Source: Ylistrum balloti (Eukaryota). Taken from it: a stretch of DNA of 64,000 bases. The first letter of the stretch is position 1. Each line of letters begins with the position of its first letter. The stretch spans positions 1,364,001-1,428,000 of the forward strand of contig NW_026782083.1 in assembly GCF_031769215.1 (NCBI RefSeq). The letters run 5' to 3'. Below the pieces are notes generated by a model. That model searched no databases. It saw only the letters and a program-made list of their open reading frames with translations, and had not been told where the DNA came from. Below, piece by piece: positions 12,901 through 64,000 of this stretch. A program made the translations under genes and the position numbers.

Positions 12901-15900
12901 AGTGATATCATTTAAAGGGTTTTCACAAATTGTGCTCTGAAATGTTAAGAGAAATTATATGATCATTCTTTGATATGTTGTATTTTTAAATCTCAATGGT
13001 TCTGTGTAAAGTATATACCATGTTCGTGATCTCTCTTTCTGACATCTGAGCCTCTGGGCCTCTTACTATCCCAAACTGTCTGTGGAAGATCTTCTTCACT
13101 TGACCTCTTTCGTGGTGGTCCAACACGCCTCTCAAGCTCCCGTGCCATCATCTCCTCAATGGCTGCTTTGCGTCTAGCTGCATTCCGTGCCTCCATCTCC
13201 TGGCGTTTCTGGACCTGCACACATTGGAGAAGTTACGATTATAGTGTGTTATCAGACTTTTTAATAGGAAAAATATATTTGAAATATTGTAATAACTTAT
13301 TAACTTTCTTATGAAAAGAAATTTTTGTGAGAACAAAATGCAGTTTTATAACACTTGATTCCTCCAAGACACAAAATATACTTAAAAATATCTAAATGAT
13401 CACTTCTATACTTTTAACATCAATATAGTATAACTAACTAGATGACACTTAAACAATTGTCTGGTTTATAGAAGTGTACCATTGAGGGTTAAATTGATTG
13501 CAAAATTTGAAAATAAAGTGAAACATAAAACTTTTACAAACAACAAAGTGGAAAATGCATTCAACAATTTAACTCACTTCTTTAAAAGTATTAAGTGGTA
13601 TTGCTGCTGTAATCAACACACAGAGACTGAGGCCCGATATTCTAAGGAAGTTAATACCATAAGTACTAGTATAAAAAAATAAGTACTCCAGCTGTAATCC
13701 TCCCCACCAGAGATTGAATTCAAATTCACTGAGGTAAGTGACATGATTTAAAGAAATCAAATTATATCAAACTTTACCCATTTTACAACGACTGCAAAAC
13801 AAGATACTCCAACTTAAAATTTATCGCTCTTGTTGGCCTGGATGGAAACGCAGGAGGGCCTTACTGTGGAAGGAAACCAGAGTACCCAAAGAAAACCCAT
13901 GTGGTCGGGCAGGTGACCTATACCTTTCTACTTTCATTCTGGGAATTGCACCTATCCTAGCTGCTTTACCACAGCACTACCCGATCACTCAAGTTTATGA
14001 TTAGTACTAGTATGAGAGGAATTGGTACCCCTGCTGTAGCCCTCTCTTGGAGAAACTAAAACCCAACTCACTCAGGGAGGTAATACAATTAGGACTAACC
14101 TGTTCCTTCATTTCCTCCACCAAGCTCTTCTGCTTCAATCCTTTAGGTTCCTTCTTTTTCTCTGCACTGCTAGATTTTGACTCCTCTTTGGATGACTTCT
14201 TGCTTTCAGTCTGGTATAAAAAATACGAAAACATTCATCAAATATTGGAATATCCATTGCATAACAAGGTATTAGCAATACTCACCACTAATACACAGCC
14301 TAATTATAACTGTTGTAAAAAGTTGTCTTTTGTTTTATATCAATTCATTTTGCACCTCTAAATAATAAATTAATTTTACTTCACTTAATCACTATCACTG
14401 AATCCAAGTATAATATACATTATGGCACCAAATGTACAGTACAAATATCCAGACTCCATAGAATATTAATTCTTTTAACACGATCACTAGAAACTGCAAG
14501 TATAACATTATGCTGACTACACTGTCACCTTCATCAGACAAATGACCAGTGAGAAGTGTATTAGCATTGATGACCGTACAAGATGGTATGAAATGACCAA
14601 CTTTTTTGACTGTACTGTAATCCTATTCTATTCTACTGAGATATCTAACCAAAGAAAATGTTTCAGAATATCCAGACTCTATGACTATTTTCTTACCACT
14701 TTTCATATGAAATTAAATTTCAGAAATGTTTTGTAATGTTTGATTCACAGAAGTCACCTTTTTGGTTTCTTTATTGTCAAATGCCATGTCCAGGGCTGCA
14801 TCAATGTCGTCGAGATCCATGTCTACCTCAGCACTGTCAGAGTCCTCCTTGTTCTTCTTGGTAGACTTTTTAGGTTCGTCACTGTCGTAGGCACTACTAC
14901 TACTATCATCATCACTGTTGTCAAAGTAAGTAGCATCAACCAGTGGTGCTTTAGAGGGCTTTGTGCTGTCTGGCTTTGGAGAATGCTGGTGGTCTGTGTT
15001 TTTGAGAATACCACTGGTTTTCTTCTGAACCAGGAAACTGGAGGTTGATGAAACCCCAGAATTGTCTCCTCCTTCAAGAGATGAAACACTTCCAGATGGC
15101 AACTCTGGACCAAACAGGCTACTTTTTCCAGAACTCACACTGTCAGGACTGAAAAAAAAAAAAATTTACCAACCTGACATAAATTTTGCACCTTCAGTAA
15201 ATCAGATGAAATCTTCTGAGACCTTTAAATGTAACCTTTCGGGCATAAATTGAGATATCAATACAGGTCTGGAAAGACTATGTTAAAGATCTGCAGGTCA
15301 GTCGTTATTTCATAAACAACCCTGGTCCAACTGGTTAAACCAATAAATGGCTTTGGTTATCATTAACCTTTTTTTTTCCAATATCAGAAAATTGTCACAT
15401 GAAAAGGCAATCTGTTCCTAAATTTTCACCAAAAATGAAAGTAATTTTATTCCCATATTAATCCATATTTGGACATTATTGCTCTACATCAGTTTACTAA
15501 CTTGTCCTGTTTGGGCTTTGTTGGTTTGACACGGCCTTCCTTGGTGAGTCGCTCAACTTTCTCCTCATACTCTTTGCGTAGTAATAGATACTGGGTGAAT
15601 TCTGCTGGGATCTCCCAAGTAACTTCATTAGTGACTGTGTTCCAGTAGTAGAAACATTGAGTGTGTTCATCCAGTGTTTGCTGCCAAACTGACACAGGCT
15701 CTATTGAAGAAATGCCATAAGTGTAAAACAAATACTGAAAACAAACTTGATTTGGCACGATTCAAATTATAGCATACAATGAAACCTCACCTAAAGACAA
15801 CTTCAAAATCAAAACCGTCATGATATTATGAACACTTACTTTCAGTCTTACATTGGTCCCCTCCGAAATATGACTATCCTGTCACTTATAGTATGACAAG

Positions 15901-21882: not shown

Positions 21883-22021
21883 NNNNNNNNNNNNNNNNNN
21901 NNNNNNNNNNNNNNNNNNNNNNNNNNNNNNNNNNNNNNNNNNNNNNNNNNNNNNNNNNNNNNNNNNNNNNNNNNNNNNNNNNNNNNNNNNNNNNNNNNNN
22001 NNNNNNNNNNNNNNNNNNNNN
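21883..22021. other. Assembly gap (139 N)
   Basis: Run of N in the sequence. Confidence 1.
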
Positions 22022-54695: not shown

Positions 54696-57600
54696 TCACT
54701 GTCCATTAAGTTTGGCTGGGTCACCAAGTGTAGCATCCCAGATTTTCATTTTGTCTGCACCAACAGTGCTCTTTGTTTTAGTCCATTTATCAGCAGATTT
54801 ATCTCCATGGGGAACACCGAACATAGCGTCGCCAAGGTCCGAGCTTAACTCAGCCAATATCTTAGGATCTTTGTAGTGTGTTACAGCTTGAGCCATGGCA
54901 ACTGCACGTTTGGCCGGATTTGAACTTTTGAAAATTCCTGATCCTACAAATACACCATCGACACCAAGCTGCATCAGGAGAGAAACATCGGCTGGAGTGG
55001 CTACAACAGAGACACCAAATGTTAATACAAGATTTACAACACAGTCATAGACTTCTTAATTTACTTACATTAATTAAAAAAATTGGCATAGCTATTATTT
55101 ATTTTACAAATTTGAGGTTCATTTCTAATATATTTGACAGAAGGAAGTTGATTAGTGATAAAAAGACAGGACATGGTACAATTGACTGTATATTTACAGG
55201 ACTGAGAGAAGCTGATTAGAGATAAAAAAGACAGGACATGGTACAATTGACTGTATATTTACAGGACTGAGAGAAGCTGATTAGAGATAAAAAGACAGGA
55301 CATGGTACAATTGACTGTATATTTACAGGACTGAGAGAAGCTGATTAGAGATAAAAAGACAGGACATGGTACAATTGACTGTATATTTACAGGACTGAGA
55401 GAAGCTGATTAGAGATAAAAAGACAGGACATGGTACAATTGACTGTATATTTACAGGACTGAGAGAAGCTGATTAGAGATAAAAAGACAGGACATGGTAC
55501 AATTGACTGTATATTTACAGGACTGAGAGAAGCTGATTAGAGATAAAAAGACAGGACATGGTACAATTGACTGTATATTTACAGGACTGAGAGAAGCTGA
55601 TTAGAGATAAAAAAGACAGGACATGGTACAATTGACTGTATATTTACAGGACTGAGAGAAGCTGATTAGAGATAAAAAGACAGGACATGGTACAATTGAC
55701 TGTATATTTACAGGACTGAGAGAAGCTGATTAGAGATAAAAAGACAGGACATGGTACAATTGACTGTATATTTACAGGACTGAGAGAAGCTGATTAGAGA
55801 TAAAAAGACAGGACATGGTACAATTGACTGTATATTTACAGGACTGAGAGAAGCTGATTAGAGATAAAAAGACAGGACATGGTACAATTGACTGTATATT
55901 TACAGGACTGAGAGAAGCTGATTAGAGATAAAAAGACAGGACATGGTACAATTGACTGTATATTTACAGGACTGAGAGAAGCTGATTAGAGATAAAAAGA
56001 CAGGACATGGTACAATTGACTGTATATTTACAGGACTGAGAGAAGCTGATTAGAGATAAAAAGACAGGACATGGTACAATTGACTGTATATTTACAGGAC
56101 TGAGAGAAGCTGATTAGAGATAAAAAGACAGGACATGGTACAATTGACTGTATATTTACAGGACTGAGAGAAGCTGATTAGAGATAAAAAGACAGGACAT
56201 GGTACAATTAACTGTCTATTTACAGGACTGAGGGAAGTTTATACCTAAGCCCCCTGCTGCAAAATTGACGACAGGAAGTCTCCCCAACTCTGCAGTTTTT
56301 TTCAGCAGCTCATGTGGCACACGAAGTTCCTTGGCATAGTTGTATAATTCTGTTGAGTCCATGGCACTTGCTGTCTTGATCTGTTTGTTGATTGTTCTGG
56401 CATGTTTCACAGCTTCAGAAACATCCCCTGTGTAAGATACAAGATGACTAAAAATGGAATTTCTGGTGCTGATGAAGATTTATAGAATCTTACATGGGTC
56501 TGTTCCACAGACAAGGATAAAGCAAAAATCTGTAATTTGTTATGAAGCATTCTCATCACATCATCACCATTAGCAACGAAATGTGTATCAAAATTTATGA
56601 CATCAATTTGTGACACTTATGCCACACAAAATGATGATGCTACCCCATTGTGAGTCATATAAAATCACTTTGATTATTTGCTTGATAATAAACTTAAGTA
56701 GACGAGCTGGATCAGTCTTGTTCATGTTACTATCATAACACTACTGATTCATACCAGTTCCTGCTTCCCCTTTTGTCCTGATCATGGCAGCTCCTTCTGA
56801 AATTCTGCGTAATGCTTCACCAAGATCACGGGCTCCACAAACAAATGGCACTTCAAAATTGTGTTTGTTGATGTGGTTCACCTCATCTGCAGGTGTTAAC
56901 ACTGCAACAATACATGATGTAGTGTTTAAATAGCACGAAACAAAGCGTTGTCCTCAACAGTGGTTGAAAATACATGTTATTGTCATTGTGAGGTTCCATA
57001 CACAAGCTTCAATCTCGCAAGATTACAAAATCAATCTTAAGAATTTTCCGTTGTCCAACACATTTTCTAAACATAGAGACTATCACTATCAATTTTAATT
57101 TCAATCTGTTATTTTTCAAAGTTCAGATGCATACGATTAAAATTTTTCAAAATCGGTCCGTGGTGGGCTCTTACACAAACTGTACAAAACACAGGAAAAA
57201 GACTAGAGACATGGATATTTTGTTTGAGTACTGTCAAATTAAAAATAATTTCTAAAAATTTCTAACCACAATCTTTTTAAATACCTTCTGATTCATCTAC
57301 CATGTCCACCCCAAGAGCTTGAAGAATCTGAGCCTCTGCAAAATGACCAATTCTTGATTTGGCCATTACTGGGATAGTCACTGCTGCAATTATTCCCTTT
57401 ATCTTCATTGGATCAGTCATTCTAGCCACGCCCCCTTCTCTTCGTATATCAGCAGGGACACGCTCTAGTGCCATGACAGCACATGCCTGAAATTGTCAGA
57501 AAGTATATTAACAGGCAAATATCAAATAAGTGCCCAAATATCTGCCTTTGTTTGCTTCAAAAATTACACAGGATTTAGTGTAAACTTTCCCCAATCACTT

Positions 57601-60600
57601 CAGCAATTCAAGCTTCAACTGGCATAGTTACATCTGTTATGATGCCAAATTTAGATAGGATTTAGTGTAATCTTACCCCAGCCTCTTCAGCTATGCGGGC
57701 TTCCTCTGGTGTTGTAACATCCATGATGATGCCACCTTTGGCCATCTGAGCTAAACCAGCCTTGACCTTGAATGTCCCTAAAAATAAGATTCCATTCCAG
57801 TTGATTACAGTAAACCAATGATTATTTTCTAGCAGTATATTATTGCAATATTTGCATATCTCAACAATTGTCAAAATAAATCATTACGAATGATATCATA
57901 ACACAATAACCAAAGATATAACATTGTTCCCACCTGTAGCTTATCATCAGTACACACCTGTCTCCCACCTGTAACTTAATGCCAGTACACTCCCATCCCA
58001 TCTTATACATACCTGTCTGTGTGGAGGTAACATCCTTCATTGTGAGATTGGTGACATCACAGGTCACACCTGAAGCCAAGGATTGATAAGGATTGACTAT
58101 TTCGTTGTGATGTGACTATTTGGTTGTGGTCTGACTTTGTTTCTGATGTGACTGACTGATGTGACTGACTTTGGTTATGATGTGACTGACTTTGGTTATG
58201 ATGTGACAGACTTTGGTTGTGATGTGACTATTTGTTTATGGTCTGACTTTGTTTCTGATGTGACAAACTTTGGTTGTGGTCTGACAGACTTTGGTTATGA
58301 TGTGACTGACTTTGGTTGTGATGTGACTATTTGTTTATGGTCTGACTTTGTTTCTGATGTGACAGACTTTGGTTGTGGTCTGACAGACTTTGGTTGTGAT
58401 GTGACTATTTGGTTATGGTCTGACAGACTTTGGTTGTGATGTGACTGACTTTGTTTCTGATGTGACAGACTTTGGTTGTGGTCTGACAGTCTTTGGTTGT
58501 GATGTGACTATTTGGTTATGGTCTGACAGACTTTGGTTGTGATGTGACTGACTTTGTTTCTGATGTGACTGAATTTGGTTGTGATGTGACTATTTGTTTG
58601 TGGTCTGACTAACTTTGATTGTGATGTGACTATTTGGTTGTGATGTGACTGACTTTGGTTGTGATGTGACTATTTGGTTGTGGTCTGACAGACTTTGGTT
58701 GTGATGTGACTATTTGGTTGAGGTCTGACTGACTTTGATTGTGATGTGACTATTTGGTTGTGATGTGACTGACTTTGATTGTGATGTGACTATTTGGTTG
58801 TGATGTGACTGACTTTGGTTATGATGTGAATATTTGTTTGTGGTCTGACTGACTTTGATTGTGATGTGACTATTTGGTTGTGATGTGACTGACTTTGGTT
58901 GTGATGTGACTATTTGTTTGTGGTCTGACTGACTTTGATTGTGATGTGACTATTTGGTTGTGATGTGACTGACTTTGATTGTGATGTGACTATTTGGTTG
59001 TGATGTGACTGACTTTGATTGTGATGTGACTATTTGGTTGTGATGTGACTGACTTTGGTTGTGATGTGACTATTTGGTTGTGATGTGACTGACTTTGGTT
59101 GTGATGTGACTATTTTGTTGAGGTCTGACTGACTTTGGTTGTGATGTGACTATTTGGTTGAGGTCTGACTGACTTTGGTTGTGATGTTACTATTTGGTTG
59201 TGATGTGACTATTTGGTTGAGGTCTGACTGACTTTGATTGAGATGTGACTATTTGGTTGTGATGTGACTGACTTTGATTGTGATGTGACTATTTGGTTGT
59301 GATGTGACTGACTTTGATTGTGATGTGACTATTTGGTTGTGATGTGACTGACTTTGGTTGTGATGTGACTATTTGGTTGTGATGTGACTTACTTTGGTTG
59401 TGATGTGACTATTTTGTTGAGGTCTGACTGACTTTGGTTGTGATGTGACTATTTGGTTGAGGTCTGACTGACTTTGGTTGTGATGTTACTATTTGGTTGT
59501 GATGTGACTATTTGGTTGTGATGTGACTGACTTTGATTGTGATGTGACTATTTGGTTGTGATGTGACTGACTTTGGTTATGATGTGACTATTTGGTTGAG
59601 GTCTGATTTTCTTCAGTTTTGATGCTTTGTTGACTACTTATGTTGTGTCGTTGTGATGTGACTGATTATGCTGTGATTTGACTAATTATGTTATGATGTG
59701 TCTACATGTGTTGTGATGTGATTTCTTATGTCATGATGTGACTACTTCTGTTGTGATGAATCTATTTGTATTGTGACAAATATGGTTGTGATGTGACCGA
59801 TTATGCTGTGATTGATTTTGCTGTGATTTGACTAATTATGTTGTGATGTGTCTGCATGTGTTGTGATGTGATTTCTTATGTCGTGATGTGACTACTTCGG
59901 TTGTGATGAATCTATTTGTATTGTGACAAATATGGTTGTGATGTGACTGATTATGCTGTGATGTGACTACTTCGGTTGTGATGAATCTATTTGTATTGTG
60001 ACAAATATGGTTGTGATGTGACTTATTATGCTGTGATGCGACTACTTCAGTTGTGATGAATCTATTTGTATTGTGACAAATATGGTTGTGATTTGACTTA
60101 TTATGCTGTGATGTGACTACTTCGGTTGTGATGAATCTATTTGTGTTGTGACAAATATGGTTGTGATGCGACTTATTATGCTGTGATGTGACTACTTCGG
60201 TTGTGATGAATCTATTTGTGTTGTGACAACTTTTGTTGTGATGTGACACTTTTGTTGTGATGTGACAACTTTTGTTGTGATGTGTGACAACTTTTGTTGT
60301 GATGTGACTTCTACTGTTACATTGTGACAAATGTGGTTGTGATGTGGTACTGAAAACACAGCAATAATTCCTTGCTTTGGATCAGAATAAACAAACTCAT
60401 TTGATTGTTGAGTGGCTACATTAATTACTTCATGCAGTACGTGTCCTTATGTAAGCATCTAACAGACAATTTTATATAACAAATATGACTTGTAGTCAAC
60501 AAGCACAAAACTACACAAGTTGGCTAATATTTAAGCTGAATATTAAGAGCTTTCAGACGAAATGCCATTTCTTTCTAAAACATACTAACTGTATGCGTCA

Positions 60601-60777
60601 TTTATGTCGCTAATATATGTTATGAATTAAAGCCTGATATACAGCGAATATATACTGAACAAAATGGCCGTAAACTTTATGTAACCACGTGTACCTTTTT
60701 TTAGAACACACGAAGTAAACGTGGTCAAGAACTATTGTATCTGTGACATACTCACCATTGAGGAGTTTCTCCGTCAT
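54696..60777 (-). CDS. PDX1: Pyridoxal 5'-phosphate synthase, synthase subunit (PdxS/SNZ), 338 aa, complete
   Basis: Coding exons 60756-60777, 58013-58069, 57677-57777, 57285-57486, 56755-56901, 56245-56427, 54696-55000 (1017 nt, phase-consistent). Signature motifs: [113 protein letters not shown]. Residues equivalent to B. subtilis D24, K81 and K149 are present. Confidence 0.98.
55137..56238. repeat. Near-perfect 64-bp minisatellite x~17 filling PDX1 intron 6
   Basis: ACTGAGAGAAGCTGATTAGAGATAAAAAGACAGGACATGGTACAATTGACTGTATATTTACAGG; copies differ almost only in A-run length. Confidence 0.97.
58090..60340. repeat. Compound TGTGATGTGAC-based minisatellite filling PDX1 intron 1
   Basis: 19/21-bp alternating units (58560-59600) and ~75-bp higher-order units (59620-60340) share the TGTGATGTGAC core. 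Confidence 0.95.
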
Positions 60778-60954
60778 GTTTTTTCTTATATTCAGCGTGC
60801 AGAATATCTCTGTATAGCGGAGTCGTCAGTTGCGAACTGTTGAAGTCAATCACCGGAACCAACAAATAACCACACCAGGCCTGTCGGGGATATGGGCTGA
60901 GAAACAAAAACGTATCCGGAGTCCAACACGTGGATGATATTTCATCAGGTAAGT
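60778..60954. promoter_or_regulatory. Candidate compact bidirectional promoter of PDX1/PDX2 plus non-coding first exon of PDX2
   Basis: PDX1 ATG at 60777; symmetric CAGTT-gcg-AACTG (60827-60839); CACGTG at 60927; consensus + strand donor CAG|GTAAGT (60949); the next strong acceptor (63146) lies 8 nt before the PDX2 ATG. Confidence 0.55.
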
Positions 60955-62039
60955 AATCTGAGAATGGTCTTTTCTGATGAAACTTACTGCATGCTTCGAC
61001 TACCATGTACTAGTGTTTACCCTACTGGCTACTCTATAACCTTCGAGGTAGGTCGACAAACCTTGTTTACAGGGTTTCATGGACGTGCTTTCGTAACATT
61101 CAAACTACCGTTACACAACCATAATTTCTCACAGTTATATAATCTTTACAAGACAACTGGTAGGTAACGAGCATGTCGTACTGTGTTACTTATTTTCTTG
61201 TGTAATATTTTTTTATAAGTCTAGACATGTCGTCTAACCGGGCCAGCTGTTATGTTGACAGATAGAAATAGCCTGATAACATCGGTGTTTCGTCCTTATG
61301 ATGTAGATGTTTATTTGTTGGTGGTACAATCAGGGACGTGGTTTAAACACAATCGGTAATGATATGACATTTTTCTACCGCGGAGTGAGGCGAGGAAAAG
61401 ATTAGTTTAAGAAGGGAGATAATTATAGCTAATACATGTATACACAACATTACGAATCTGACGGTTTTTAATATCTAAGACTTAAAAATTGACTGGTTTG
61501 TCCGTCCTCCCCTCCCTCTCCAGTAAGTTTGGGCTATATACAATTGATGATTTAGCTTCTTATATCGCTTTTCGTTGAAACTGCCAATATGTTTTTTATG
61601 TGATGTTAGATCTAGAAGGGTTTTAATTATCACAAAATTAATGGTCGGGCAGCGCTTAACTGATGTAGAATCCATCTATTCAGAACATGTTTTTACAAAA
61701 ATAATAACCTAGTACATCCTCTCTAAAATATATCATTGTTTATTTATTGTTATTTCTTCATGACAACAGAACGTTATCTTCTCAAAGTAAGAAGTAAAGG
61801 TTTTTGATATTTTAAAATGTACAACATTAATGGCTGAAAGGAGATTTCACCGAATCTTAATTGGTACTTGTTGAAACGAAGGTATGATTGATTACATAAT
61901 ATTTTGGACACTACTCGACCTTCCCTTTTTGGAAAGAACAGAAACAGCACATGCACTTACATATATGATACTTGGTTTTTATTATCTTTTGAGTTTGCAT
62001 ATGTGGAGGTTTATTAACACTTAGATAATATATGCATTC

Positions 62040-62345
62040 AGATCGATAACATTAAACTGCGATGTGTAGACATTGGATATAGATAACATTTAAACACGGA
62101 CGATAGACACAGAATATCGATAACATAACTTACGGACGGTGGACACAGAATATGGATAACATTTAAACACGGACGATAGACACAGAGTATCGATAACATT
62201 TAAACACGGACGATAGACACGGAATATCGATAACATTTAAACACGGACGACAGACACAGAATATAGATAACATTTAAACACGGACGATAGACACAGAATA
62301 TCGATAACATAACTTACGGAAGGTAGTCACAGACTATCGATAACA
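62040..62345. repeat. 37-bp minisatellite x~8 carrying TATCGATA palindromes
   Basis: CGATAACATTTAAACACGGACGATAGACACAGAATAT unit. Confidence 0.9.
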
Positions 62346-62959
62346 TGTTACAAAATTGCAGTTGCCAGACTTTTCTCCGTTATGATCAGAGATTATAAAA
62401 CGTACGGGGTTTCTGGTCGAGTTCGAATCCTGATCGACAAGTCCAATATTAGAAGTAGTTACGGCCATTTGTGCAAAATGTTATTTAAACTTGAAGTGCA
62501 GAGATAATGTCTTTGATGTGTGGCTTCAACCTACAGGGTTACCAGTGAAGTTTGAATCGATCTTGGTTGAAAAATTAAGTTTCAGGTGCAGTTCTGGTCC
62601 TTTGTACTTCTGTTTTCCGGACTTCTTTCCATTGTGTCCAGATATAGAAACTTGGTATGGCGCTTCGACCTTCGTGATTACAGATTGATCTTTTTAATTG
62701 TTTCCCCGAATTTTTTGTTGTGTCTCGAGATATGCGGTAAAATATAATTTTTGGTGGCTAATGGTTGTTAGAGATAAAATTTTGTTACATATCACACCCG
62801 CAGTGCATTGTGGGTCATTAATTTACCATCATCCCACCGCGATTACCCATTTTCTACAACGATGAGACTGACTCGGTTAATAACCTGAAATATGTTCGGA
62901 CATCCGAAATTAAACCCCATTCCAACACAGAACCTATTCATTTATGTTTGTCTGGTTAT

Positions 62960-63070
62960 GTTATTCATAATTACTCAACAAACATTGTTTCTCCAAGATA
63001 AGTTTAGGAAAACTTGGTGGGACAGATGAAGTCTATGTGACTGGCGAGTGCGTTACCACTGCACCATCCT
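62960..63070 (-). mobile_element. tRNA-derived SINE head relic
   Basis: Minus strand GGATGGTGCAGTGGTAACGCACTCGCC (A-box-like); no intact B-box or cloverleaf. Confidence 0.35.
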
Positions 63071-63154
63071 AAAATACATGACATGATGTGAGGAGGGTGC
63101 CGACATTTCTATTTTATTCATTATTATTATTATTTCCATTTCCTAGAATTAATC

Positions 63155-63517
63155 ATGCCGCAAACTGGTCTCAACGGAAATGAAAACAGACGCAGAAAAA
63201 TCGGCATTCTGGAGGTTCAAGGTGCATTTCAAGAGCACAAAGTGGCGCTGATGAAAGCCAAAAAATGTTTGCACACGACACCAGAACTTGAAGTGATGGA
63301 GGTACGTCACCCAGACCATCTAGTCTCTGACATGGATGGCCTAATTATACCGGGAGGGGAAAGCACAACCATCAGTTTATTCCTGAAAAGAAACAACATG
63401 GAAGAACCGCTCCGAAACTGGATACAAACAAAAGGTCACGTGGTATGGGGAACATGCGCAGGAATGATTCTTTTATCAAGGTTTACTGAAAACCAAAAGG
63501 ATGGCGGACAGCCTACG
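63155..63517 (+). CDS. PDX2: Pyridoxal 5'-phosphate synthase, glutaminase subunit (PdxT/SNO); first coding exon, 3'-partial
   Basis: KIGILEVQGAFQEH, DGLIIPGGESTT, catalytic nucleophile motif WGTCAGMILL, QKDGGQ; acceptor CTAG at 63143-63146 and donor ACG|GTATGT at 63518; 121 codons. Confidence 0.96.
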
Positions 63518-64000
63518 GTATGTCGGTAACTGATAAATGTATATTGATTAATCTGAGTATATAGCTATTATCGAACTGGTGAATGGTATACGTTTGATAG
63601 TGACAGCTGGTAAATGTTTTATTCATATTAGTTGCCATCAATGTAACTTTGTAATGTTTTTTAATGAGACGCGTGACGACAAAGCACATTGTAGGGAGAT
63701 ACATACGTATATATATATGTTAAATACATATTGGTTTCTTTCCCGAAGTTCGGTTGCCGCTTGGATTATAAAATATGATATGCGAAACATAAACACAAAT
63801 GCTGGGACTTGGTCACCATACCTCTTTGTCTGGATATTTGATTGTAACACTTCCTTGTCTGGAAATATGCGTTTGATCGCCACACTTGTTTGAAAAGTCT
63901 ATTGTTTAGTTTATTTTATTACTGATATTATCTGCTAGGATAGGGCGCCCACAAAGGCTTGCTTCTTCATGTCATGTATCTCAGGTCTGGTTGGAAGCAT

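What the first reader, a model, noticed from the sequence alone, without database searches (positions are those of the whole stretch)
54696..63517. Intact, intron-rich, head-to-head PDX1/PDX2 (de novo vitamin B6 synthase) pair in an animal genome
Seen: a complete 7-exon PDX1 with catalytic Asp/Lys residues intact, and a divergent PDX2 with the PGGESTT and GTCAG motifs; the ATGs are 2378 bp apart. Both genes have GT-AG introns filled with host-type repeats and sit on the same scaffold as the animal genes RIC8 and FNBP4, which argues against contamination. Established: PDX1+PDX2 make PLP from ribose-5-phosphate, triose phosphate and glutamine; vertebrates, insects and C. elegans lack them; divergent SNZ/SNO pairs occur in yeast and, as I recall, in the sponge Suberites. 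Inference: this probable bivalve may be a B6 prototroph that keeps an ancient operon-like linkage. Presence in some marine invertebrates is reported, so the novelty is the retained linked locus and its regulation rather than the genes themselves.
Basis: partly seen in the sequence, partly recalled or inferred. Interest (0 to 1): 0.85.

Follow-up and report, generated by a model that had tools for sequence, protein, structure and literature searches.

The report
Mollusc vitamin B6 synthase gene pair
The window holds a real, intron-containing animal PDX1 gene and the first half of a PDX2 gene facing away from it, but the same pair is already annotated in many molluscs, an annelid and corals, so it is an ordinary inherited locus.

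Summary
PDX1 lies on the minus strand as seven GT-AG coding exons (60777 to 54696), giving 338 aa with the catalytic Asp and both Lys in place. Only the first coding exon of PDX2 (63155-63517, plus strand, 121 aa) is in the window. It carries the PGGESTT and GTCAG (Cys) motifs. The two ATGs are 2378 bp apart.

Contamination and recent gene transfer are excluded. All six introns sit at positions and phases shared with a gastropod, chiton, octopus, jellyfish and coral. Animal PDX1 proteins form one clade. Ric8 lies downstream of PDX1 here and in a chiton.

The finding is not new. PDX1 is annotated as "SNZERR-like" or "PdxS-like" in many molluscs, an annelid and cnidarians. A 2021 paper already credits vitamin B6 synthesis to mollusc hosts. 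The divergent SNZ/SNO pair is a published conserved gene pair. I found the same head-to-head layout in Mytilus, Haliotis, Liolophura, Owenia and the coral Desmophyllum.

Two things stay open. The second PDX2 exon, which carries His/Glu, is expected 1.3-1.8 kb past exon 1, beyond the window. No RNA data were available. "Operon-like" is a misnomer: this is a divergent eukaryotic pair. Other first-reader notes on this window cover the intergenic region (s1-254432) and RIC8.

The parts
60756..60777 (-). PDX1 coding exon 1 (22 nt, MTEKLLN + first base of Gly8), donor G|GTGAGT
   Evidence: The N-terminus matches other molluscs (MTEKLANG, MTEKITNG). The intron position 8.1 is shared with Haliotis and Liolophura.
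58013..58069 (-). PDX1 coding exon 2 (57 nt, animal-type N-terminal extension containing VTNL)
   Evidence: tblastn of P0288; model; intron 27.1 shared by all eight animals compared.
57677..57777 (-). PDX1 coding exon 3 (101 nt; carries the active-site Asp of the MDV motif)
   Evidence: Pfam SOR_SNZ E = 3.6e-11; a 101-nt exon is conserved in seven animals.
57285..57486 (-). PDX1 coding exon 4 (202 nt; PVMAK lysine and DESE). It is a fusion of the ancestral 81-nt and 121-nt exons.
   Evidence: Pfam E = 1.2e-30; PDB PdxS/PDX1.3 matches at E = 1e-26; loss of the intron at 88.0 shown.
56755..56901 (-). PDX1 coding exon 5 (147 nt; RTKGE second catalytic lysine)
   Evidence: Pfam E = 1.3e-27.
56245..56427 (-). 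PDX1 coding exon 6 (183 nt)
   Evidence: Pfam E = 6.6e-13.
54696..55000 (-). PDX1 coding exon 7 (305 nt including the TGA stop; phosphate-binding GSGIF region and a mollusc-type long C-terminal tail)
   Evidence: The closest database pieces are 73-88% identical.
60778..63154 (.). Region between the two start codons (2377 bp). It is the presumed shared promoter region and holds a 37-bp x 7.4 tandem repeat at 62077-62346.
   Evidence: No sequence conservation with the corresponding regions of Mytilus, Haliotis, Owenia or Liolophura. Promoter function was not tested.
63155..63517 (+). PDX2 coding exon 1 (121 aa; PGGESTT and the Cys nucleophile of GTCAG), ending at a GTATGT donor
   Evidence: Pfam SNO E = 8e-23; PDB PdxT/Pdx2; the same exon end (GGQ-P-T/S) is seen in Mytilus, Haliotis and Liolophura.
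63518..64000 (+). Start of the PDX2 intron. The second coding exon is not in the window.
   Evidence: tblastn of the C-terminal half of Pomacea PDX2 (P0411) finds nothing in the window. It finds exon 2 at 1.3-1.8 kb after exon 1 in three molluscs.
55144..56237 (.). 64-bp x 17 minisatellite (99% matches) filling PDX1 intron 6
   Evidence: visible.
58100..60309 (.). 2.2-kb minisatellite of 20/40-bp units filling most of PDX1 intron 1
   Evidence: strong GC and AT skew.

Best explanation
This is the ordinary nuclear locus for the two subunits of glutamine-dependent pyridoxal 5'-phosphate synthase in a bivalve close to Mytilus. It was inherited vertically from at least the cnidarian-bilaterian ancestor. 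PDX1 (338 aa, seven coding exons) is the synthase subunit. From established biochemistry of the family, it condenses ribose 5-phosphate, glyceraldehyde 3-phosphate and ammonia into PLP through the two conserved lysines. PDX2 is the class I glutaminase subunit, with a Cys-His-Glu triad, that docks on PDX1 and feeds it ammonia. The two genes are transcribed divergently from a 2.4-kb region between their start codons. This layout is shared with other lophotrochozoans and a coral, and probably keeps the two subunits co-regulated. Shown here: gene structure, intact catalytic motifs, orthology, conserved introns, conserved head-to-head layout. Inferred: transcription in this species, a complete PDX2, enzyme activity, and a shared promoter.
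For: Gene model and motifs.

Orthologues: PDX1 is annotated in Mactra, Mytilus, Haliotis, Dreissena, Liolophura, Mya, Lottia, Saccostrea, Octopus, Owenia, Nematostella, Exaiptasia and others. The window protein is 95.5% identical to P0288 and 86% to Mytilus californianus PDX1.

Introns: all six intron positions and phases are shared with Haliotis, Liolophura, Octopus, Rhopilema and Desmophyllum.

Tree: animal sequences form one clade (SH-aLRT 99), apart from the fungi, the plant and the Chloroflexi sequences. The window groups with Mytilus.

Head-to-head SNO/SNZ layout: Mytilus (1.8 kb apart), Haliotis (5.7 kb), Liolophura (6.4 kb), Owenia (0.8 kb) and Desmophyllum (0.4 kb).

Synteny: Ric8 lies convergent downstream of PDX1 in both Liolophura and the window.

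Second individual: contigs from a separate DNA run, about 1% different, cover most of 60200-63550 in two pieces with a break at 62112-62280.

Transcripts in relatives: uninterrupted full-length PDX1 ORFs on 1.3-3.4 kb contigs (P0288, P0270) can only come from spliced mRNA, and they include exon 2.

Literature: host-made vitamin B6 in molluscs (PMC7895826); SNZ1/SNO1 as a conserved divergent pair (PMC2871058).
Against: The C-terminal half of PDX2, with the catalytic His and Glu, is outside the window and could not be retrieved. No RNA run was found for this species; the one run found is DNA. Transcription, start sites and co-expression are therefore unshown. The intergenic region has no detectable sequence conservation with other species. 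The head-to-head partner is absent within 10 kb in Octopus and Rhopilema, so the linkage is not universal.
Confidence: 0.88

Rival explanations
1. The block is contaminating bacterial, fungal or algal DNA mis-assembled into an animal scaffold.
For: PDX1 is so conserved that the protein is 71.6% identical to a fungal PDX1 and about 73% to Chloroflexi PdxS. No dispersed repeat links the block to the rest of the window.
Against: There are six spliceosomal introns at animal-specific conserved positions. The protein sits inside the mollusc clade. Ric8-PDX1-PDX2 synteny matches a chiton. GC content is the same as the rest of the window. No assembly gap lies between Ric8 and PDX1; the only N run is at 21883-22021. 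A second individual's DNA carries the same region.
Confidence: 0.01
2. The pair was acquired by a recent horizontal transfer into this lineage, as is reported for PLP-synthase genes of plant-parasitic cyst nematodes (my own knowledge).
For: Most textbook animals lack the pathway, so a patchy distribution could suggest gain.
Against: Orthologues exist across Mollusca, Annelida and Cnidaria. They share intron positions and phases and form one clade. The divergent gene-pair layout is shared with a coral. The patchiness is better explained by loss in vertebrates, insects and nematodes.
Confidence: 0.02
3. The locus is a decaying relic: PDX1 looks intact, but PDX2 is truncated or broken downstream, so the animal is not a B6 prototroph.
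For: Only 121 of about 240 PDX2 residues can be seen. The best database match to this exon is only 75% identical, so PDX2 evolves faster than PDX1.
Against: PDX2 exon 1 has an open frame, a conserved start (MPQ...), the oxyanion and Cys motifs and the conserved splice donor. PDX1 is under evident constraint: exon 4 is 100% identical over 67 aa to P0288. Related molluscs have complete two-exon PDX2 genes with FHPE.
Confidence: 0.07

Closest known systems
Mollusc 'pyridoxal 5'-phosphate synthase subunit SNZERR-like / PdxS-like' genes (e.g. Mytilus californianus, Haliotis rufescens, Liolophura sinensis) with their adjacent SNO-family genes
   Same: The proteins are 80-86% identical. They share the animal-type N-terminal extension, the intron positions and the head-to-head SNO partner. 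PDX2 is a two-coding-exon gene whose exon 1 ends at the same point.
   Different: This species has lost the intron at residue 88 (ancestral exons of 81 and 121 nt are fused). Mytilus californianus lost the introns at 61 and 177 instead. Intron 1 here is expanded by a 2.2-kb minisatellite.
Suberites domuncula SNZ (SNZERR) and SNO genes (Seack et al. 2001, Biochim Biophys Acta 1520:21; seen here only as a citation)
   Same: These are animal PLP-synthase subunit genes. From memory, not checked here, the sponge genes are also linked head-to-head with a shared promoter region.
Saccharomyces cerevisiae SNZ1/SNO1 and other fungal pairs
   Same: It is a divergently transcribed pair encoding the same two subunits. 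It is listed among the most conserved divergent gene pairs in eukaryotes (PMC2871058).
   Different: The fungal pairs are compact and mostly intron-poor (my own knowledge, not tested here). Here the start codons are 2.4 kb apart and PDX1 spans 6.1 kb with six introns.
Bacterial pdxS-pdxT (B. subtilis YaaD/YaaE) and Arabidopsis PDX1.3/PDX2
   Same: Same Pfam families, same catalytic motifs, and about 70-85% identity in the PDX1 core.
   Different: The bacterial genes are co-directional in an operon and the plant genes are unlinked (my own knowledge). Neither has the animal N-terminal extension.

Membership tests
PDX1 / PdxS / SNZ (Pfam SOR_SNZ, PF01680) | Full-length match to the SOR_SNZ domain | tested here: met
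   Exons 3-6 match profile positions 2-34, 38-100, 101-150 and 157-207 of 207, with E-values from 4e-11 to 1e-30.
PDX1 / PdxS / SNZ (Pfam SOR_SNZ, PF01680) | Schiff-base lysine in the PVMAK motif, the second lysine in RTKGE, and the Asp of the MDV motif. The residue roles come from established PdxS/PDX1.3 biochemistry (my own knowledge). | tested here: met
   All three motifs are present in the spliced protein. Exon 4 aligns without gaps to solved PdxS and PDX1.3 chains.
PDX1 / PdxS / SNZ (Pfam SOR_SNZ, PF01680) | Uninterrupted coding sequence with canonical splice sites | tested here: met
   Seven exons, six GT-AG introns, 338 codons plus stop.
PDX1 / PdxS / SNZ (Pfam SOR_SNZ, PF01680) | PLP synthase activity and dodecamer assembly | not testable with these tools
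   Needs an enzyme assay or complementation.
PDX2 / PdxT / SNO (Pfam SNO, PF01174) | Match to the SNO glutamine amidotransferase domain | tested here: inconclusive
   Only profile positions 1-88 of 188 are covered (E = 8e-23). The rest of the gene lies beyond the window end.
PDX2 / PdxT / SNO (Pfam SNO, PF01174) | Nucleophile Cys (GTCAG) and the oxyanion-region PGGEST motif | tested here: met
   Both are present in 63155-63517 and align with PdxT/Pdx2 structures.
PDX2 / PdxT / SNO (Pfam SNO, PF01174) | Catalytic His and Glu (FHPE motif) | not testable with these tools
   These are encoded by exon 2, which is 1.3-1.8 kb downstream of exon 1 in Mytilus, Haliotis and Liolophura. That is past position 64000 here. 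The look-up for this genome's contig failed.
Conserved divergent SNZ/SNO gene pair | The two genes are adjacent, on opposite strands, with 5' ends facing | tested here: met
   PDX1 ATG at 60777 (minus) and PDX2 ATG at 63155 (plus). The same layout occurs in five other animal genomes.
Conserved divergent SNZ/SNO gene pair | Shared bidirectional promoter and co-expression | not testable with these tools
   No RNA run was found. There is no sequence conservation in the intergenic region.

The most novel reading that the evidence does not exclude
The divergent PDX1-PDX2 pair is a microsynteny block kept since at least the cnidarian-bilaterian ancestor, and perhaps since the opisthokont ancestor given the fungal pairs. 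It is held together by a shared bidirectional promoter. In this species PDX2 may start with a non-coding exon that abuts PDX1 exon 1 (candidate donor after 60948, acceptor before 63147). A systematic account of this retention across Lophotrochozoa and Anthozoa, with lineage-specific intron losses, may not yet be published.
Probability: 0.5. Interest if true: 0.35.

Novelty: already known. Interest (0 to 1): 0.22.

Why it matters
The locus is a clean example against the textbook statement that animals cannot make vitamin B6: many marine invertebrates keep the two-gene pathway. That matters for nutrition budgets in symbiosis and aquaculture studies. However, this is already reflected in genome annotations and in at least one comparative mollusc paper. 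The modest added value here is a checked exon-level gene model. It also shows that the intron positions and the head-to-head layout are shared from coral to bivalve.

Tried and rejected
1. My first six-exon PDX1 model joined exon 1 directly to the GTFKV exon. It was in frame but wrong: comparison with P0288 revealed the 57-nt exon 2.

2. I considered a longer exon 1, because the read-through [17 protein letters not shown]... looks like the mollusc N-terminus. No in-phase donor fits, so I rejected it.

3. The representative search with exon 7 returned mostly exon-sized fragments.

4. L001, the genome contig of an 83% identical relative, did not reach the first exons or PDX2 within 10 kb.

5. 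The exact-sequence look-up of the PDX2 exon-1 ORF found nothing, so this genome's downstream sequence was not obtained.

6. The only sequencing run found was DNA contigs of another individual, with no RNA.

7. Look-ups for Nematostella, Exaiptasia and Mya PDX1 found no record.

8. Literature searches for 'SNZERR', and for PDX1 in invertebrates, gave little.

9. A search for conserved non-coding sequence in the intergenic region found none.

10. A search for dispersed repeats shared between the PDX introns and the rest of the window found none.
Full report
**What is there**

On the minus strand, ORFs with clear PdxS/PDX1 similarity are strung between 54696 and 57874. On their own, single exons match Pfam SOR_SNZ with E-values down to 1e-30. 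Together they cover positions 2-207 of the 207-position profile. The 65-aa translation of 57280-57474 (most of exon 4) aligns without gaps to solved PdxS and Arabidopsis PDX1.3 chains at about 85-90% identity.

On the plus strand, 63155-63517 encodes 121 aa. These match the first 88 of 188 positions of Pfam SNO (E = 8e-23), and the best PDB matches are PdxT/Pdx2. Chance is not an issue at these scores.

**Gene model of PDX1**

My first model had six exons and was in frame, but it was incomplete. A search of 1.8 billion representative proteins with the last exon, followed by a cluster look-up, gave a full-length relative, P0270. Searching with P0270 gave P0288, which is 95.5% identical to the window protein.

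Laying P0288 on the window exposed a 57-nt exon at 58069-58013 between the ATG exon and the GTFKV exon. The final model has seven coding exons:
- 60777-60756
- 58069-58013
- 57777-57677
- 57486-57285
- 56901-56755
- 56427-56245
- 55000-54696

There are six GT-AG introns, and the product is 338 aa.

The motifs that carry the catalytic residues in characterised PdxS/PDX1 enzymes are all present. They are the Asp in MDV, the Schiff-base Lys in PVMAK, DESE, and the second Lys in RTKGE. Their roles are from my own knowledge of the family; their presence is.

**PDX2**

Only the first coding exon is in the window. It has a conserved start (MPQ..., as in several relatives), the PGGESTT motif and the GTCAG cysteine. 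It ends at a GTATGT donor in phase 0.

In Mytilus californianus, Haliotis rufescens and Liolophura sinensis the gene has two coding exons. Exon 1 ends at the same place in all three. Exon 2 carries FIRAP and FHPE (the catalytic His and Glu) and lies 1.3-1.8 kb further on. Here that would fall past position 64000.

I could not retrieve that sequence. The integrity of the second half of PDX2 in this genome is therefore unknown.

**Is it the animal's own gene?**

Yes, on several independent lines of evidence.

1. I mapped the annotated PDX1 proteins of seven other animals onto their genomic loci with an exact splice mapper. All six introns of the window gene (residue.phase 8.1, 27.1, 61.0, 128.1, 177.1, 238.1) are shared with others:
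   - The five from 27.1 onward sit at identical position and phase in a gastropod, a chiton, an octopus, a jellyfish and a stony coral.
   - The first intron matches exactly in the gastropod and the chiton. In the other three it lies within three residues, in the poorly aligned N-terminus.
   - The annelid shares five of the six.
   - The common pattern has a seventh intron at 88.0. This species has lost it, fusing the ancestral 81-nt and 121-nt exons into one of 202 nt.
   - Mytilus californianus has instead lost the introns at 61.0 and 177.1.
2. In a maximum-likelihood tree of 40 PDX1 proteins, the mollusc, annelid and cnidarian sequences form one clade with four unlabelled marine-catalogue sequences (SH-aLRT 99). 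This clade is separate from the fungal, plant and Chloroflexi sequences. The window protein plus P0288 is sister to Mytilus.
3. Ric8 lies convergent downstream of PDX1 in the chiton. The window's Ric8 exons (36846-38403) match that gene, and another Ric8 exon is seen weakly by Pfam at 32801-33154.
4. GC content is uniform across the window, and the only assembly gap is at 21883-22021.
5. Contigs of a second individual, about 1% divergent, cover most of 60200-63550 in two pieces, with a break at 62112-62280 in the 37-bp repeat.

The introns contain large minisatellites (64 bp x 17 in intron 6, and 2.2 kb of 20/40-bp units in intron 1). Nothing in 54.6-64 kb matches the rest of the window.

**Head-to-head layout elsewhere**

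I looked at the neighbourhood of annotated PDX1 genes in seven other animals. Five have a SNO-family gene on the opposite strand immediately upstream:

| Species | Group | SNO-to-SNZ gap |
|---|---|---|
| Mytilus californianus | bivalve | 1.8 kb |
| Haliotis rufescens | gastropod | 5.7 kb |
| Liolophura sinensis | chiton | 6.4 kb |
| Owenia fusiformis | annelid | 0.8 kb |
| Desmophyllum pertusum | stony coral | 0.4 kb |

Octopus bimaculoides and the jellyfish Rhopilema esculentum have no such partner within 10 kb. The arrangement therefore predates the cnidarian-bilaterian split and has been lost or stretched in some lineages.

It is not operon-like. Bacterial pdxS and pdxT are co-directional (my own knowledge), whereas these are two divergently oriented, separately spliced genes.

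**What is already known**

- PDX1 is named "pyridoxal 5'-phosphate synthase subunit SNZERR-like" or "PdxS-like" in NCBI annotations of many molluscs and cnidarians. An Owenia orthologue is present but unnamed.
- Lan et al. 2021 (PMC7895826) compared 19 molluscs. They state that vitamin B6 is a nutrient made only by the host in the Gigantopelta holobiont, and that the host can supply it to the symbionts.
- Davila Lopez et al. 2010 (PMC2871058) list SNZ1/SNO1 among the most conserved divergently transcribed gene pairs of eukaryotes.
- The sponge SNZ/SNO paper (Seack et al. 2001) was visible only as a citation. My recollection that it describes a head-to-head pair with a shared promoter is unverified.
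- Many reviews still say that animals cannot make vitamin B6 (for example PMC7954711). The locus contradicts a textbook simplification, not the specialist literature.

**How it most likely works**

From the established mechanism of the family, PDX2 hydrolyses glutamine and passes the ammonia to PDX1. [quoted passage not shown] Divergent transcription from a common region would help keep the two subunits balanced.

- Shown here: structure, motifs, orthology, ancient introns, conserved layout.
- Inferred: expression in this species, a complete PDX2, activity, and a shared promoter.

There is indirect evidence of expression in close relatives. P0288 and P0270 are uninterrupted full-length ORFs on contigs of 1.3-3.4 kb. 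Given the intron-rich genes, these must be spliced mRNAs.

**Verdict**

The finding is a real, correctly described and well-preserved locus, but an ordinary one: it is already annotated in related species and already interpreted in the literature. Interest is low. The remaining open points are the unseen half of PDX2, the promoter architecture, and a systematic dating of the head-to-head arrangement.

Noticed in passing
window 57570-57660 (minus strand, PDX1 intron 3): A decayed tandem copy of the 3' end of exon 3 plus its donor region lies just inside intron 3. TRF reports period 87, 1.9 copies, 76% matches. The copy contains a stop codon. tblastx also picks it up against the exon of other species.
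   Followed up: partly
window 57285-57486 versus L002-L008: Introns have been lost in a lineage-specific way. This species lacks the ancestral intron at residue 88 (phase 0). Mytilus californianus keeps that one but lacks those at residues 61 and 177. Two mytilid-like bivalves therefore lost different introns from the same gene.
   Followed up: yes
window 58013-58069 and 60756-60777 (PDX1 exons 1-2): An N-terminal extension of about 25 aa with the motif NG-x-x-(D/E)-V-(T/S)-N-L is shared by molluscs and by sea anemones (Exaiptasia, Nematostella). It is absent from Owenia, fungi, plants and bacteria. Its function is unknown.
   Followed up: partly
window 60900-60948 and 63110-63147: A strong acceptor (a long pyrimidine tract followed by AG at 63145-63146) sits 8 nt before the PDX2 ATG. 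A consensus donor (CAG|GTAAGT) follows 60948, only about 170 bp from the PDX1 ATG. There is no RNA evidence.
   Followed up: no
window 58100-60309: A 2.2-kb minisatellite of 20/40-bp units fills PDX1 intron 1. It has extreme strand asymmetry (GC skew 0.49, AT skew -0.43) and creates long artefactual ORFs on both strands. The second individual differs here by a 22-bp deletion at 60261 and a rearranged stretch near 59647-59673.
   Followed up: partly
window 55144-56237: A 64-bp unit is repeated 17 times at 99% identity and fills most of PDX1 intron 6. The near-identity suggests recent expansion or homogenisation.
   Followed up: no
window 15606-15686 (minus strand): An exon encodes a WW domain (Pfam WW, E = 6e-7).
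   Followed up: partly
window 32801-38403 and L006 22624-25322: Ric8 lies convergent to PDX1 both in this bivalve and in the chiton Liolophura sinensis, so Ric8-PDX1-PDX2 is a conserved mollusc microsynteny block.
   Followed up: partly
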